A DNA stretch of 64,000 bases from Octopus sinensis (GCF_006345805.1 NW_021833435.1:1-64000), one strand, 5' to 3'; shown: positions 3,111-64,000, counted from the stretch's first letter. Program-made: numbers and translations. Notes: generated by a model not told the origin, from the sequence alone.

Positions 3111-3226
3111 TCATATTCCACTGCAATAGCACTCTTGGTGGTCTTTGATTTCCTTAACAAATGAAGATGGTGCCATTTATTTATATAATTGGTGACTAGT
3201 TCTGTCAATGTTATTAGAATCCGGCA
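3111..3226 (-). CDS. CENPI: CENP-I copy A exon 13 (CRILITLTELVTNYINKWHHLHLLRKSKTTKSAIAVEY)
   Basis: tattcag|TGC ... TGA|gtatct (the TGA is split as TA-T|GA, not an in-frame stop); 116 nt; resembles CSVLQSLKELLQNW. Confidence 0.82.
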
Positions 3227-6200
3227 CTGAATAAAACAAAACAAGGATTAGTCATAGACATTTACAAGAACTATAAAGAGATTTAAAAGCGGTGCTCCAG
3301 CATGGCCACAGTCAAATGACTGAAACATGTAAAAGAGTAAAAAAGATTAATATTGTTGTGTGTCAGTAAGTCTCAATTTAGTAAACTAAAGGAATGAGTT
3401 TATGTTTATGTGCCAATGCTTTGTACATTCATTGTATCTGTCGAAAGTATTATTTATATCTGTATTTTCTGATGAACGGCATTGTTAGAAACTGCAGAGA
3501 AGGCCTCTGAGTGGGTTTGGGATGAAGAGGGGAGATTACTGCTATTGGGATGCTAAGTTGGGACTTGATCAATCCTGGCTGGGTCAACTGGGTGAGTGGG
3601 GTTTGATGTTAGAAGACCCAAACCCCAGTGGAGACCCTAGAAACATCACTGAACATTTGCAAGATGCATCTTAGAAACTAATAACAATCTCCTCATCCCA
3701 TATCCCTCTGCCTCCTCTTCCCCAAAGTTTCTCTGCCTCCTTGACACTCCTCCTCACCTTCCTGCATGAAACCCCTACACTGGTCTTTCCTTCAAGGATT
3801 CACCCAGGTTTCCTCTCCCCATTAATCTATTGCTTCCTTCCAAACCCTTTTCTCTCATATCTTCTGCCCACACTAGCCCCTTATGATATTGGATAGCCCA
3901 CTGCTTTTTCTCAACCCTGTCACTACTTCTGTGAAGTGGTTGAAGCTAAGAAGGGCAACCAACGATAGCAATCAGACCAAAGAGGCCCTTGGTCTATGAC
4001 ACATACACATTAGACCCTGTGAAACAATCCTACCTGTGCCAGTATAGAAACTAGATGTAAAGTGGTTGATATTAGGATAAGCAGCCAGCCATGGCAACCA
4101 GGCCAAGGACATTGGTGCAGGAGTCAGTCCATCGACTCATCAAACCCTGTCACACTGACCAACCTGTGCCAGCACAGAAGCTAGATGTTGAGGAAGATGA
4201 AGAAGAAGAAGGAAGAGGATAAATACAGAGGTCAAGCATTTCAGAGCATTCTCTTGAAATAAAAAGAAATGATTATCACATTTGCAAAAAGTAAATATCA
4301 ATTGAAACAGAATGAAGAAGAGAAGAGAAATATTAAAAGAGTAATGCAATATTCTGATTTTACCTTTAAATAAGTTCCACGTCGGAAAAATATTTTCCTC
4401 AGGGGATCTAACAGAATCTGATGTAGTTCTGAATACGATATTTGAAAGGAAAATTAGAAAAGACAAAAAAATGATAGATATCAGTAAGAAAGTAAAGATT
4501 TACAATAACTTATCACTGAAAATATAAAATTTTTAGATAATTTCTTCCTTGAATTAAAAAGTTTGCAGGTGTAGCTTTTGTAAAAGCTGCAAACCTAGGC
4601 CACGTCTGATCCAAAAATCTGATTCAAGCCCAGGCTATCCCTGCTCGAATAATCAATGGTGACTTCACCAATTAATATTCTGCAATAGTTGATAATATAC
4701 AAGATGAGCTACAATGAATCACCTCATCACAAAGTGCGTATGCATGGGATTAGGGACCACAAGTGGCCTTGTGTTCCCACTGAAACTATAAACATGAAAT
4801 CTACACCCCAACAGCAAATGACAACCATAGCTACAGTGTTCAAGCTTCACTACAGCTGACTGTCTGACATGGTGAACTCGCTGGTTGGAGCTGGTTCATT
4901 TCAGTCCAGGGTAATGCCACAACAAGCACAAGTATTGGATGAGATACCTTGCAATAATTGTTTCAGCTCTTAGCATTCAGAGTTCAAATCCCACCATGGC
5001 CTACACAATCGACTCAGATGCAAACATTGAGGCCAAATCTCCAGTCTGAAAGATTAACCACCTACGTCCCCCAACCACCAGTATCAAAGACCCTATAAAG
5101 GGTCATGGGCACCACCCTTCCTGCCTCACTAAAAGATTTAAAAAAATAAAAACGATTACCAAGAACTAAGTAAAAACTTTCAAGAGTTTCAGCTGAGAAA
5201 ATAGACAAGTTGTCATTGCGTTTAAAAACACACAGAATGTAAGGATCTTTTCGGTTGATGCCAAAGATTTGGTAATTTTAAGATCAAGTAAAAATTTTCA
5301 AACTTGGAGTGTTGAAACTCTTTTACTTGTTTCAGTCATGCTGGAGTACCACCTTTAGTCGAGCAAATCGACTCCAGGACTTATTCTTTGTGAGCCTAGT
5401 ACTTATTCTATCGGTCTCTTTTGTTGAACCACTAAGTTATGGGGACATAAACACACCACCATCAGTTGTCAAGCGATGTTGTGGGGACAAATACAGACGC
5501 ATATATATATATACATATATATGATGGCTTCTTTCAGTTTCTGTCTACAAAATCCACTCACAAGGCTTTAGTCGGCCTGAGGCTATAGTAGAAGACACTT
5601 GCCCAAGGTGCCACGCAGTGGGAGGACTGAACCCCAAACCATCAAACTTGGAGTGTTGATGTAAATTTTCACACTGAATCTGGGATTCATTTATTCCCAG
5701 GAAAATTTAGAAAAATATTACAGAGTTTCAAAGTTTGATAACTTAGTTCAGGCAGACAACAGGAATTGGAAGATGAAAACCTTCTGGAGGATAACTGTCA
5801 GAAAATGACAAATGATAGATACAACACAGCAGAAAATGATATCACTCATCAAAACTTGAGGTGGTTAAAGTGTCACAGTGATGCAAGTTCCATGTCTTTC
5901 TTACAATGGAAACAAGGCTGACTACAGCTTTGCTATTTTCTTTGGAAACAAACACCAAAGTGAGATGTATGGTTGAGAATAAAACTGAAGAAATATGAAA
6001 TCTCTGACAGCAACCAAAATGATCTGAATATAGTGGTGGTTAATCTAGTCAAATATTTCATTTATGTGTCGGTGGCACATAAAATCACCCACTACACTCT
6101 CGGAGTGGTTGGCGTTAGGAAGGGCATCCAGCTGTAGAAACACTGCCAGATCTGACTGGCCTGGTGCAGCCTTCGGGCTTGCCAGACCCCAGTTTAACCG

Positions 6201-63900: not shown

Positions 63901-64000
63901 TAATTGTAGCTCCCAATTCAAATGGGTTCTGTGATTGATAATCCGTTGCTTCAGTACCTGATCACATACAACAAAAACCGACACATAACAGGCCAGTTTA
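33803..64000 (+). CDS. CENPI: CENP-I paralog B, spliced gene (exons 1-9 in window, continues beyond 64000)
   Basis: Exons 33803-33905, 42459-42590, 49640-49770, 50964-51071, 54122-54217, 55828-55914, 57607-57714, 60948-61115, 63910->64000. Exons 1-8 have the same lengths, phases and GT-AG sites as copy A exons 1-8; exon 9 has the same acceptor and phase and is cut by the window edge. No stop or frameshift in 1024 nt. Confidence 0.88.
34088..34268. mobile_element. hAT-type MITE
   Basis: TIR CAGTGCTTTTCAA...TTGAAAAACCACTG with perfect 8-bp TSD GTGTAGAT. Confidence 0.9.
41059..41277. mobile_element. hAT-type MITE, same family as 34088-34268, opposite orientation
   Basis: CAGTGGTTTTCAA...TTGAAAAGCATTG with perfect 8-bp TSD CATTATAC. 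Confidence 0.9.
41887..42131 (-). mobile_element. Non-autonomous Helitron (copy B intron 1, internally deleted mirror of 27556-27851)
   Basis: Same termini and identical flanks on both sides. Confidence 0.8.
42459..42590 (+). CDS. CENPI: CENP-I copy B exon 2 (E-SSFKKPRGKLKTCIVNVKVCARAVGLSHEDILGLVNVAASLRY)
   Basis: ctttacag|AA ... ATATG|gtgaga; 132 nt. Confidence 0.88.
43138..43660. repeat. 30-bp minisatellite, about 17-18 units, inverted paralog of 26282-26556
   Basis: Units such as GTGCACCTTGATGCAGCTGTCCTCATCCAT. Confidence 0.85.
44019..44726 (+). mobile_element. Tigger/pogo-like DNA transposon remnant
   Basis: Imperfect TIRs GAGTAATACCTC / GAGGGCATTACTG with TA flanks; C-terminal transposase-like CYREIYREQKTASSMQTTLDLLFKKK; absent from the mirrored copy A site near 25905. 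Confidence 0.6.
44958..48815 (-). mobile_element. R4/Dong-clade non-LTR retrotransposon (restriction-like endonuclease type), internally deleted
   Basis: Single disrupted ORF about 47920-45190. N-terminal KWSREDNKEVLEAFY block; RT remnant HLIYMDDL..FGLDKC; LKSETEGFIIAAQDQ; CCHC knuckle (CHVC...ETIDHVVSKC); RHD and PDIIL..D..P..K nuclease motifs; C-terminal GTAHILRKIL. (TAA)n at both ends; empty site in copy A at about 25205-25230. Confidence 0.88.
49640..49770 (+). CDS. CENPI: CENP-I copy B exon 3 (G-IRISCDLIQCCIPQTTFPQRAAIRLLSCINHHTISEKANTSFT)
   Basis: ccttataag|GA ... TCACG|gtgagt; 131 nt. Confidence 0.88.
50058..50290 (+). mobile_element. SINE family 2 (representative copy), nested in a family-1 SINE
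   Basis: GGCGAGCTGG..GTTCTGAGTTCAAATTCCGCCGAGG..GCAATAAAGAAATAAGA. The mirror copy 23515-23742(-) is flanked by TSD ACACACATGTATATATCT. Other copies at 24330-24552(-), 62245-62375(+), 62378-62600(-). Confidence 0.8.
50964..51071 (+). CDS. CENPI: CENP-I copy B exon 4 (KLVFHWIVLVMPYMDAYDKLHAVYNVFFYLLRNYDI)
   Basis: atttcag|AAA ... ATT|gtaagt; 108 nt. Confidence 0.9.
51650..52490 (-). mobile_element. Tc1-like transposon fragment (one TIR, DD34E remnant)
   Basis: TA-CAGGGGTTGGACAAAATAA TIR; VKHGGRSVMIWGAI...FQDDNAPIH...WPPQSP; FHRRVAIRKPLLSKKN; only in copy B. Confidence 0.85.
52495..53330 (+). mobile_element. RTE-clade LINE 3' portion (degenerate)
   Basis: FCYLSDQVSSGSGCSESVAARIRLAWAKFRELLPLL..KGRLYDAC; GRPGRHG-like C-terminus. 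A shorter mirror lies at about 22300-22640 on the minus strand. Confidence 0.8.
54122..54217 (+). CDS. CENPI: CENP-I copy B exon 5 (LPEICYILSELTLYPDVTLFRINELILLWKKT)
   Basis: ccttcag|CTC ... ACG|gtaaag; 96 nt. Confidence 0.9.
55191..55455 (+). mobile_element. tRNA-derived SINE private to copy B intron 5
   Basis: Head GGCATATGGCGTAGTGGTAAAGAGTG..GAATTCGATTC; flanking repeat ATATCTATAT; empty site near 20165 in copy A. Confidence 0.7.
55828..55914 (+). CDS. CENPI: CENP-I copy B exon 6 (GNVPSLIGLLTKYKMLQPDKLGLSLPKYQ)
   Basis: ttttcag|GGG ... CAA|gtaatt; 87 nt. Confidence 0.9.
56100..56611. mobile_element. Tc1/pogo-type MITE inserted into a SINE head
   Basis: TA-CTGTAAATCCTTGAGTATA ... TATACTCAAAGATTTACGG-TA; single-TA empty site in copy A (gatgcttaatggt, near 18640). 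Confidence 0.8.
57607..57714 (+). CDS. CENPI: CENP-I copy B exon 7 (RFYRSPNSKMQKIIQAVQLRRGLELKALAQKSVNSP)
   Basis: ttttcag|CGC ... CCA|gtaagg; 108 nt. Confidence 0.85.
58203..58561. repeat. Tandem dimer of a 179-bp unit
   Basis: GTTTGAAGCGATCA starts at 58203 and 58382; the units align end to end. Confidence 0.85.
60064..60585 (+). mobile_element. RTE LINE fragment fused directly to the RTE 3' tail
   Basis: AIKSMKTGKAPGPSGITAEMLK...NCYKGKG...QFRFVPGKST, then a jump to the tail ending (GAT)n. Confidence 0.85.
60948..61115 (+). CDS. CENPI: CENP-I copy B exon 8 (VRKKAKLSKLIPQVQSSVNDY...ILTFEDLLQYIDQIQ)
   Basis: ttttcag|GTT ... CAA|gtaaga; 168 nt. Confidence 0.9.
61861..63551 (-). mobile_element. 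Degenerate mariner spanning copy B intron 8, interrupted by SINEs and other relics
   Basis: TIR TCAGGTTGGAAT at both ends with TA flanks. N-terminal HTH relic (SQELEDVITANPVPSARELAKKFKASHTTIL) at 63051-63278 and C-terminal relic near 61930-62020. Confidence 0.7.
63910..64000 (+). CDS. CENPI: CENP-I copy B exon 9, cut by window edge (LPIQMGSVIDNPLLQYLITYNKNRHITGQF)
   Basis: aattgtag|CTC; homologous to 13663-13783 on the opposite strand. Confidence 0.9.

What the first reader, a model, noticed from the sequence alone, without database searches (positions are those of the whole stretch)
3111..64000. Two intact, divergently transcribed CENP-I paralogs in a giant palindrome
Seen: mirror-image copies of a CENP-I gene with ATGs at 31579(-) and 33803(+). 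All nine comparable exons have intact GT-AG sites and phases, and neither copy has a stop or frameshift. Hand count: 68/1024 nt and 40 aa differ. Established: CENP-I is a core subunit of the CCAN CENP-H/I/K/M complex and is usually single-copy in animals; kinetochore-gene duplicates (e.g. Drosophila Cid/CENP-A and CENP-C paralogs) have specialised for germline roles. Inference: this may be an undescribed two-isoform inner kinetochore in a cephalopod (e.g. soma versus germline, or mitosis versus meiosis), kept by selection while the introns turned over.
Basis: partly seen in the sequence, partly recalled or inferred. Interest (0 to 1): 0.92.

Follow-up and report, generated by a model that had tools for sequence, protein, structure and literature searches.

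The report
Two octopus CENP-I genes in palindrome
Octopus sinensis (and its sister O. vulgaris) carry their only two copies of the inner-kinetochore gene CENP-I head-to-head in an old ~100-kb palindrome, both intact and under purifying selection, so octopus cells can build two slightly different versions of a normally single-copy kinetochore subunit; whether they have different jobs is untested.

Summary
The window is the first 64 kb of an unplaced 72.9-kb Octopus sinensis contig that is palindromic end to end.

The palindrome is real, not an assembly fold-back. A gap-free O. vulgaris chromosome assembly is collinear with the contig straight through the centre. It carries the same two divergently transcribed genes 2.25 kb apart.

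Each gene has 19 coding exons (~710 aa). Each matches Pfam CENP-I (E 1e-58) and human CENP-I over its whole length. There is no third CENP-I locus in the genome.

Both copies are under purifying selection: dN/dS between orthologues is 0.20 (R) and 0.27 (L), substitutions are fewer than in introns, and there are no indels. Arm identity is a mosaic (75-100%), which indicates patchy gene conversion on an old duplication. The oldest strata have dS 0.16-0.37, against ~0.10 to O. bimaculoides.

Fifty-one fixed amino-acid differences cluster in the N-terminal tail and the inter-domain linker. Both genes are already annotated in RefSeq/ENA as 'CENP-I-like', but no paper in the searched library describes them. 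Functional specialisation (germline versus soma) remains untested.

The parts
1..32219 (.). Left palindrome arm (carries the L copy; reaches the contig start)
   Evidence: Inverted-repeat HSPs. Collinear with the O. vulgaris L arm.
32220..32839 (.). Unique central spacer between the arms (~620 bp)
   Evidence: Innermost arm HSP is 31808-32219 vs 33256-32840. The centre is present in C9906 and C9065 and in O. vulgaris.
32840..64000 (.). Right palindrome arm (carries the R copy; continues to contig base 72,928 outside the window)
31477..31579 (-). L copy exon 1 (ATG at 31579)
27097..27228 (-). L exon 2
24032..24162 (-). L exon 3
22744..22851 (-). L exon 4
21238..21333 (-). L exon 5
19700..19786 (-). 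L exon 6
18027..18134 (-). L exon 7 (most diverged exon, 80.6% identical to R)
14866..15033 (-). L exon 8
13663..13783 (-). L exon 9
10249..10331 (-). L exon 10
6934..7051 (-). L exon 11
4364..4428 (-). L exon 12
3111..3226 (-). L exon 13 (true 116-nt exon). The RefSeq model reads on to 2990 into intron 13. Exons 14-19 lie beyond the contig start, on chromosome C9.
33803..33905 (+). R copy exon 1 (ATG at 33803)
42459..42590 (+). R exon 2
49640..49770 (+). R exon 3
50964..51071 (+). R exon 4
54122..54217 (+). R exon 5
55828..55914 (+). R exon 6
57607..57714 (+). R exon 7
60948..61115 (+). R exon 8
63910..64000 (+). R exon 9, cut by the window end (full exon 63910-64030). Exons 10-13 are at contig 66281-72397; exons 14-19 lie beyond the contig.
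31580..31815 (-). L proximal promoter/5' region, homologous to R's. Conserved blocks include CACGTG, TTTAAA and TTTGAA.
   Evidence: Four-way alignment.
33567..33802 (+). R proximal promoter/5' region, homologous to L's
33257..33566 (.). ~310-bp dispersed-repeat (SINE-like) insertion just upstream of the R promoter. Absent from L, present in O. vulgaris R.
   Evidence: >100 genomic copies at 81-87% identity. Arm HSPs break here. Alignment.

Best explanation
An old inverted duplication created a palindrome of roughly 100-110 kb on an Octopus chromosome. Each arm holds one complete 19-exon CENP-I gene. The two genes are transcribed divergently from separate, homologous promoters about 2.2 kb apart, across a spacer of ~0.6 kb.

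Since then the arms have exchanged sequence intermittently by arm-to-arm gene conversion. Some stretches are 96-100% identical, while others (exons 1, 3, 7, 10 and their flanks) keep ~10-25% divergence.

Both genes encode full-length CENP-I and are the only CENP-I genes in the genome. Both are maintained by purifying selection, so both are expected to supply the CENP-H/I/K/M module of the inner kinetochore.

What is shown: the structure, the family assignment, intactness, conservation in two species, selection on both copies, and mosaic identity.

What is inferred: the two proteins (51 fixed differences, concentrated in the N-terminal tail and the inter-domain linker) and their promoters (a repeat insertion upstream of R only) have partitioned or modified the ancestral role. 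L is probably the faster-evolving, derived copy. The nature of that partition, whether by tissue, stage or dosage, is not known.
For: Structure:
- Inverted repeat. The whole 72.9-kb contig is palindromic.
- The centre is present in two O. sinensis contigs.
- The gap-free O. vulgaris chromosome OX597823.1 has the two genes head to head, 2,249 bp apart, and the contig is collinear with it through the centre at 96.4%.
- O. bimaculoides has exons 10-11 of a second, inverted copy upstream of exons 8-18.

Identity:
- Pfam PF07778, E 2e-58 and 5e-58.
- 308 homologues, typically ~700-750 aa.
- Human CENP-I chains, E 3e-57 over residues 49-697.
- No other locus in the 2.7-Gb assembly.

Intactness:
- 19 exons with equal lengths and AG/GT boundaries.
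- No stops.

Selection:
- Orthologue dN/dS is 0.20 for R (P=7e-4) and 0.27 for L (P=4e-4).
- CDS substitutions are 19 against 44 expected (R) and 32 against 48 expected (L); indels are 0 against ~4 expected in each.
- The same holds in the unconverted exons.
- Paralogue exons are less diverged than their flanks, P=0.005 and 1e-4.

Conversion and age:
- Block identity ranges from 73% to 100%.
- dS is 0.16-0.37 in the old exons, ~0.05 elsewhere, and ~0.10 to O. bimaculoides.
- R groups with R and L with L across species.
Against: - No expression, read-depth or protein data could be examined.
- The paralogue dN/dS is high (0.56-0.65, up to 0.8 in the old exons). Many fixed differences are conservative or lie in regions likely to be weakly constrained. 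The two proteins may therefore be functionally equivalent.
- In the O. sinensis chromosome scaffold the two halves lie 672 kb apart on the same strand, each ending at a 100-N gap. This contradicts the palindrome, although it is best read as a scaffolding break.
- The polarisation that makes L the faster copy assumes O. bimaculoides is an outgroup. Its copies are in fact R/L mosaics.
- The outermost 1.4 kb of the contig arms are 100% identical, which may be an assembly arm switch rather than biology.
Confidence: 0.8

Rival explanations
1. Redundant dosage pair. Both copies make functionally interchangeable CENP-I. The pair is retained for dosage or robustness, helped by occasional gene conversion, and the fixed differences are neutral drift in weakly constrained segments. 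There are no distinct kinetochore isoforms.
For: - Fixed differences are concentrated in the N-terminal tail (27% of residues) and the linker (15%), against 4-7% in the folded domains. Many are K/R, D/E or V/I swaps.
- The old exons show dN/dS of 0.55-0.8 with no excess over 1.
- The core promoter blocks are conserved in both copies.
Against: - Two fully redundant genes are not expected to persist under purifying selection for a period corresponding to dS ~0.2-0.3.
- All 51 differences are fixed and shared between two species despite ongoing conversion elsewhere in the arms.
- The amino-acid rate is asymmetric: 16N/2S against 6N/4S.
- A repeat insertion lies upstream of R only.
Confidence: 0.35
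2. One copy (probably L) is non-functional or on the way to being lost. It looks intact only because gene conversion from the good copy keeps repairing it.
For: - The paralogue dN/dS is 0.56-0.65.
- L accumulates more amino-acid changes.
- Conversion clearly occurs.
Against: - L versus its O. vulgaris orthologue has dN/dS of 0.27 (P=4e-4). It has fewer substitutions than its introns and no indels where ~4 are expected.
- The same holds in exons 1, 3, 7 and 10, which have not been converted.
- All 19 exons and all splice sites are intact in O. vulgaris.
- Alternative RefSeq isoforms exist for both copies.
Confidence: 0.06
3. Assembly artefact. The palindrome is a fold-back, chimeric or haplotig contig, and the organism has one CENP-I gene.
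For: - The window contig is unplaced, and its ends duplicate parts of chromosome C9.
- C9 lacks the central 36 kb and places the two ends 672 kb apart on one strand.
- The terminal 1.4 kb of the arms are identical.
- The outer right arm of C9065 looks L-like.
Against: - The arms differ by 2-25% with large indels, and the exon differences are substitutions, not the indel errors typical of raw long reads.
- An independent, gap-free assembly of another species has the same arrangement and the same 51 copy-specific residues.
- A second O. sinensis contig spans the centre.
Confidence: 0.02

Closest known systems
CENP-I / Mis6 / Ctf3 (Pfam PF07778), subunit of the CENP-H/I/K/M module of the CCAN inner kinetochore
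   Same: Both octopus proteins match the family model over positions 58/70-506 of 515. They align with human CENP-I from its N-terminal HEAT domain to its C-terminus. Length (~710 aa) is typical of the family.
   Different: There are two genes instead of the usual one, and no third 'canonical' copy. The octopus proteins are only ~30% identical to those of other molluscs and invertebrates. Kinetochore localisation and partner binding were not tested.
Specialised kinetochore paralogues, such as Drosophila Cid (CENP-A) and Cenp-C duplicates with germline-biased roles (from established knowledge, not tested here)
   Same: A normally single-copy centromere/kinetochore gene is duplicated. Both copies are retained across species under purifying selection, one evolves faster, and the differences are concentrated in tails and linkers.
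   Different: A different subunit (CENP-I) and phylum. The copies sit in a palindrome and still exchange sequence. No expression or localisation data exist, so specialisation is only a hypothesis.
Gene-bearing palindromes with arm-to-arm gene conversion, such as primate X/Y ampliconic palindromes (from established knowledge)
   Same: Two long inverted arms around a short spacer, one gene copy per arm, and evidence of conversion (mosaic identity, lineage-specific tracts).
   Different: Arm identity is 75-100% rather than >99.9%. Conversion has been patchy enough for the two genes to fix 51 amino-acid differences. By accession order (my inference) the locus is on chromosome 10 of O. vulgaris and O. 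bimaculoides, not the reported sex chromosome. Testis-specific expression is unknown.

Membership tests
CENP-I/Mis6/Ctf3 (PF07778) | Significant match to the family profile over most of its length, above the curated cut-off | tested here: met
   198.8 and 197.5 bits against a cut-off of 23; profile positions 70-506 and 58-506 of 515.
CENP-I/Mis6/Ctf3 (PF07778) | Full-length collinearity with experimentally characterised CENP-I (N-terminal HEAT domain plus C-terminal domain) | tested here: met
   Human CENP-I chains (7PKN_I and others), E 3e-57, octopus 49-697 against human 92-735. The N-terminal-domain structures 7PB4_I and 5Z07_A match octopus 49-239 and 18-240.
CENP-I/Mis6/Ctf3 (PF07778) | Assembly with CENP-H/K/M and localisation to kinetochores | not testable with these tools
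   Needs biochemistry or imaging.
Retained, specialised kinetochore paralogues | Two intact copies conserved across species, each under purifying selection | tested here: met
   O. sinensis and O. vulgaris each have R and L. dN/dS is 0.20 and 0.27, with a deficit of substitutions and indels relative to introns.
Retained, specialised kinetochore paralogues | Different expression domain or function of the copies | not testable with these tools
   No transcriptome or read data are available. The only indirect hints are the R-only promoter repeat and RefSeq isoforms for both copies.
Retained, specialised kinetochore paralogues | Signature of adaptive or asymmetric protein divergence | tested here: inconclusive
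   The branch counted as L has 16N/2S against 6N/4S on R (Fisher P=0.15). The L early phase differs from its recent phase (P=0.007). However, the outgroup is itself a mosaic and no exon has dN/dS robustly above 1.
Palindrome with arm-to-arm gene conversion | Long inverted arms flanking a short unique spacer, with one gene copy per arm | tested here: met
   Arms are at least 32 kb and 40 kb in O. sinensis, and ~50-55 kb in O. vulgaris. The spacer is ~0.5-0.6 kb. Only CENP-I genes are called in the 120-kb O. vulgaris locus.
Palindrome with arm-to-arm gene conversion | Evidence of sequence exchange between the arms | tested here: met
   Arm identity ranges from 73% to 100% in adjacent blocks. Exons 4, 5, 11 and 15 are near-identical while exons 1 and 7 are ~80% identical. 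The exon 3-5 region has a different history in the two species, and O. bimaculoides exon 10 is identical between its own two copies. The direction and timing of individual events are not resolved.
Palindrome with arm-to-arm gene conversion | Near-complete arm identity (>99%), as in primate sex-chromosome palindromes | tested here: not met
   Overall exon identity is ~95%, and many intron blocks are 75-90% identical.

The most novel reading that the evidence does not exclude
Octopuses build two distinct inner-kinetochore (CCAN) variants from the two CENP-I paralogues, for example a germline/meiotic form and a somatic form. Selection actively opposes gene conversion at exons 1, 3, 7 and 10 to keep the N-terminal tail and linker of the two proteins different. 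This would be the first documented paralogue specialisation of a CENP-H/I/K/M subunit in an animal.
Probability: 0.3. Interest if true: 0.75.

Novelty: new member of a known kind. Interest (0 to 1): 0.5.

Why it matters
CENP-I is a core, normally single-copy scaffold of the inner kinetochore. Retained paralogues of centromere proteins have been informative elsewhere about germline-specific chromosome segregation and centromere conflict.

Here the only two CENP-I genes of an octopus are both selectively maintained yet carry 51 fixed differences. They sit in a palindrome that still exchanges sequence. This offers:
- a clean natural test of whether a CCAN scaffold subunit can be sub-functionalised;
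- an autosomal, non-mammalian example of how gene conversion and selection balance in a gene-bearing palindrome;
- a practical warning that this locus is broken or mis-joined in the O. sinensis and O. bimaculoides assemblies and truncated in RefSeq models.

The 96 diagnostic CDS positions make paralogue-specific expression directly testable with existing RNA-seq data.

Tried and rejected
- **Pfam exon-by-exon scan of the genome.** It gave weak extra hits on contigs C12596 and C10363 (model positions 156-220, E ~0.02). The full octopus protein does not match them, so I treat them as chance or unrelated.
- **Fetching the rest of C9 and all of C9065.** As a result, exons 17-19 of the O. sinensis copies are known only from the annotated proteins P0006 and P0014.
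- **Two further homology searches.** Both were saturated by word candidates and returned only the window's own proteins. Copy number in squid, cuttlefish, nautilus or other octopods could therefore not be assessed. The nearest named relatives are crinoid, bivalve, amphioxus and annelid CENP-I.
- **Assigning the two O. bimaculoides copies to R and L from intron similarity.** This failed. Each is a mosaic of R-only and L-only segments, and the assembly there is full of gaps.
- **Global four-arm MAFFT alignment.** It is unreliable across transposon insertions (windows at ~50% identity). I used it only qualitatively and relied on local alignments for the numbers.
- **Positive selection in exon 7.** I suspected this because the exon is more diverged than its 5' flank, but the exon's dS is also high (0.31-0.37; dN/dS 0.55-0.66).
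- **Rfam scan.** No RNA family was found in the window.

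
Full report
**What is in the sequence.** A self-comparison of the window finds a large inverted repeat. The left arm runs up to 32219 and the right arm starts at 32840, with a unique spacer of ~620 bp between them. Aligned blocks range from 73% to 98% identity and are interrupted by many indels and repeat insertions. The two proposed start codons are real. Exon 1 reads MAVNMPSSPSSSTKKTSLEKLLDSLESNVDVICDG|GT from 33803(+) and MAVNMLSSPSSSSRRRSLERMLESLESNIEYVCDG|GT from 31579(-).

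**Where the window comes from, and the assembly question.** The window is bases 1-64000 of contig C9906 in a 2.72-Gb assembly of 13,516 contigs. Database proteins identify the organism as Octopus sinensis. C9906 is only 72,928 bp long and is palindromic from end to end.

Chromosome-scale scaffold C9 contains only the two outer parts of this contig:
- C9906:1-24173 lies at 74.52-74.55 Mb.
- C9906:60071-72923 lies at 73.85-73.87 Mb, reversed relative to the contig.

On C9 both gene fragments lie on the minus strand, and each piece ends at a 100-N scaffold gap. The central 36 kb, which holds both 5' gene halves and the spacer, exists only in C9906 and in a second unplaced contig, C9065, which is 98% identical across the centre.

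That pattern could have meant a fold-back artefact, but an independent assembly settles the matter. In the gap-free Octopus vulgaris chromosome OX597823.1, an L-type gene (+) and an R-type gene (-) lie head to head, 2,249 bp apart. C9906 is collinear with that locus from end to end, including an uninterrupted 3.2-kb alignment at 96.4% across the centre. The palindrome is therefore real, and the C9 arrangement is a break in the O. sinensis scaffold.

**Gene models.** Three exon peptides pulled out the annotated proteins. Exact spliced mapping gives 13 exons per copy on the contig, with identical lengths and phases and GT-AG at every intron.

The 518-aa RefSeq models end in an identical low-complexity tail. 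That tail is read-through into intron 13, caused by the contig ends. Longer models exist on C9065 and in O. vulgaris. The gene has 19 coding exons: 2139 nt and 712 aa for R, and 2133 nt for L in O. vulgaris, where exon 18 is 6 nt shorter.

There is no stop or frameshift in exons 1-16 of either O. sinensis copy, nor in exons 1-18 of either O. vulgaris copy. L in O. vulgaris was mapped through to its stop codon. For exons 17-19 of O. sinensis I have only the annotated C-termini P0006 and P0014, both of which end normally. Over the 13 contig exons as annotated (1557 nt), the copies differ at 80 nt and 47 aa.

**Family.**
- Both proteins match Pfam CENP-I/Mis6 at E ~1e-58, over profile positions 58/70-506 of 515.
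- An exhaustive HMMER search finds 308 relatives, mostly ~700-750 aa.
- The nearest named relatives are 'centromere protein I' of a crinoid, bivalves, amphioxus and an annelid, at ~30% identity.
- The 705-aa form aligns with human CENP-I from cryo-EM CCAN structures over residues 49-697 (E 3e-57). It also aligns with the isolated N-terminal HEAT-domain structures over residues 49-239.
- A six-frame search of the whole assembly with the full protein hits only C9906, C9065 and the two C9 fragments. These two paralogues are therefore the only CENP-I genes present.

**Are both kept by selection?** Across O. sinensis and O. vulgaris, R groups with R (19 differences in 1986 nt) and L with L (32 differences). 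R and L differ at about 96-106 positions in either species. The same exons are divergent or near-identical in both species.

Since that split:
- dN/dS is 0.20 for R (8N/11S, P=7e-4 against neutrality) and 0.27 for L (16N/16S, P=4e-4).
- Non-coding orthologous divergence is 2.2-2.4%. On that basis R has 19 CDS substitutions where 44 are expected (P=1.5e-5), and L has 32 where 48 are expected (P=0.008).
- Neither copy has an indel where about 4 are expected.
- Exons 1, 3, 7 and 10 have clearly not been homogenised, and the deficit holds there too: 3 and 4 substitutions against ~10 expected. Repair by conversion from a single good copy therefore cannot explain the intactness.
- Between the paralogues, exons differ less than their own flanks (5.4-5.6% against 7.7-7.9%; P=0.005 and 1e-4). 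Exons have no indels, while the flanks have dozens.

The arms differ in length because of transposon and satellite turnover.

**Age and conversion.** Divergence between the arms is strongly heterogeneous.
- Exons 4, 5, 11 and 15 are 99-100% identical; exons 1 and 7 are ~81-83% identical.
- Pooled dS is 0.16-0.20 for exons 1, 3, 7 and 10, and ~0.05 for the remaining exons. Exons 1 and 7 alone give 0.26-0.37 in O. sinensis (exon 1 is 0.14 in O. vulgaris).
- dS to O. bimaculoides over exons 8-16 is only ~0.09-0.10.

The oldest strata therefore predate the O. bimaculoides split. Consistent with that, the O. bimaculoides locus, although full of gaps, shows exons 10-11 of a second copy on the opposite strand, just upstream of exons 8-18. 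Its exon 10 is identical between its own two copies, whereas R and L differ there by 6-7 nt in the other two species. Each of its copies is also a mosaic of segments shared only with R or only with L.

In the exon 3-5 region, L of O. vulgaris differs from L of O. sinensis far more than elsewhere, while L and R of O. sinensis are 95-96% identical. This implies conversion near or after the species split, or sorting of converted and unconverted haplotypes.

The simplest reading is an old inverted duplication followed by intermittent, patchy, lineage-specific arm-to-arm conversion.

**How the proteins and promoters differ.** Fifty-one amino-acid differences are fixed between R and L in both species. 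Their density is 27% in the N-terminal tail (residues 1-48), 15% in the linker (241-300), 7% in the N-terminal HEAT domain and 4% in the C-terminal domain. Many are conservative.

Paralogue dN/dS is 0.56-0.65, and no exon shows robust dN/dS above 1. Polarised with O. bimaculoides, 16N/2S changes fall on the L side and 6N/4S on the R side. The L early phase differs from its recent phase (Fisher P=0.007). L is also further from O. bimaculoides in protein (dN 0.047-0.050 against 0.037). This suggests a burst of change in L followed by constraint. The polarisation is weakened, however, by the mosaic nature of the outgroup.

The ~235 bp upstream of both ATGs are homologous and keep strongly conserved blocks, including CACGTG, TTTAAA and TTTGAA. 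These are possible cell-cycle elements, which is my inference. Immediately upstream, R alone carries a ~310-bp dispersed repeat, in both species.

**Comparison with what is known, and novelty.** Membership in the CENP-I family is met on every sequence criterion; function was not testable. As a phenomenon, this is a new example of two known kinds. One is retained paralogues of a centromere/kinetochore protein. The other is a gene-bearing palindrome with arm-to-arm conversion, here with much lower and patchier arm identity than the primate sex-chromosome palindromes.

Both genes are already in RefSeq and ENA as 'centromere protein I-like'. No paper in the searched library mentions CENP-I together with octopus, or any cephalopod kinetochore duplication.

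**Verdict.** It is untested on the proposed division of labour.

I put ~0.8 on the core account: two functional, selectively maintained CENP-I genes in a real, old, partly converting palindrome. Within that account, I put about 0.3 on truly distinct kinetochore isoforms and about 0.35 on near-equivalent duplicates.

Noticed in passing
Chromosome scaffold G000:C9:74524397-74554843 (compare window 11299-17940): The C9 version of the left arm carries a ~6.3-kb tandem duplication of the segment equal to window 11299-17940. Exons 8 and 9 of the L copy therefore appear twice, and one exon 8 is interrupted. C9906, C9065 and O. vulgaris have a single copy, so this is probably an assembly artefact in C9.
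   Followed up: partly
Contig C9906 71531-72928 versus window 1-1400: The outermost ~1.4 kb of the two arms are 100% identical in C9906, but 96.7% identical in O. vulgaris. Exon 13 on the right arm of C9906 equals the L version, whereas the C9 fragment has a distinct R version (SVIAVEHE). This is either a very recent conversion or an assembler switching arms.
   Followed up: partly
Contig C9065 (107,611 bp), right arm beyond ~72 kb: The outer exons of C9065's right arm score identically to the L-copy fragment on C9, and the C-terminus of the 705-aa model P0004 is L-like. This suggests C9065 switches from the R arm to L-arm sequence.
   Followed up: no
Window 2990-3110 and contig 72398-72518: The RefSeq 518-aa models (for example XP_036355443.1) end in a 39-aa low-complexity tail that is read-through into intron 13. 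The real gene continues for six more exons outside the contig.
   Followed up: yes
O. vulgaris locus L028/L029 (OX597823.1:79673555-79793530): The ENA gene models omit coding sequence that is intact in the genome. CAI9729258 lacks part of exon 7, and CAI9729259 lacks exons 13-14. This could be alternative splicing or annotation error.
   Followed up: partly
Window 33257-33566: A dispersed repeat of ~300 bp (SINE-like) with more than 100 copies at 81-87% identity across the genome. It contains an internal 62-bp A-rich tandem duplication at 33349-33474.
   Followed up: partly
Window 45360-47325 (-): Three consecutive ORFs (158, 218 and 186 aa) in R intron 2. One has a weak zf-RVT match (E 9e-5, below the Pfam cut-off). 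This is probably a degraded non-LTR retrotransposon. It is absent from the L arm and contributes to the longer R intron.
   Followed up: partly
Window 26280-26558 and 43133-43662: A 30-bp minisatellite at the homologous position of both arms (intron 2), with 9.3 copies in L and 17.8 in R.
   Followed up: no
Window 29060-29677 and 30360-30836: A local inverted repeat (314-nt core, 98% complementary, ~0.8 kb apart) inside L intron 1, overlapping a 155-bp tandem repeat. It looks like a foldback or TIR element, and no counterpart was seen at the homologous place in R.
   Followed up: no
Window 1121-1316, 6071-6250, 12741-12985, 13346-13623, 15910-16194, 21960-22121, 36073-36816, 39418-39564 and others: Many copies of at least two short interspersed repeat families (~190 bp and ~420 bp) are scattered through the introns of both copies in both orientations. 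They account for most of the off-diagonal inverted-repeat hits.
   Followed up: no
G000:C12596:216410-216604 and C10363:195971-196165 (L004, L005): Open frames of 165 and 127 aa give weak Pfam CENP-I hits (model positions 156-220, E ~0.02), but the octopus CENP-I protein itself does not match them. The two contigs appear to be duplicates of each other. Their identity is unknown.
   Followed up: partly
O. bimaculoides L030 (CM046610.1:13979184-14019484): The locus has nine N-gaps in 40 kb. It jumps from exon 10 of an inverted copy to exon 8 of the forward copy within ~4.7 kb, and exons 1-7 were not found. The palindrome centre is probably collapsed in this short-read-based assembly. The RefSeq protein XP_052827189.1 consequently has a spurious N-terminus.
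   Followed up: partly
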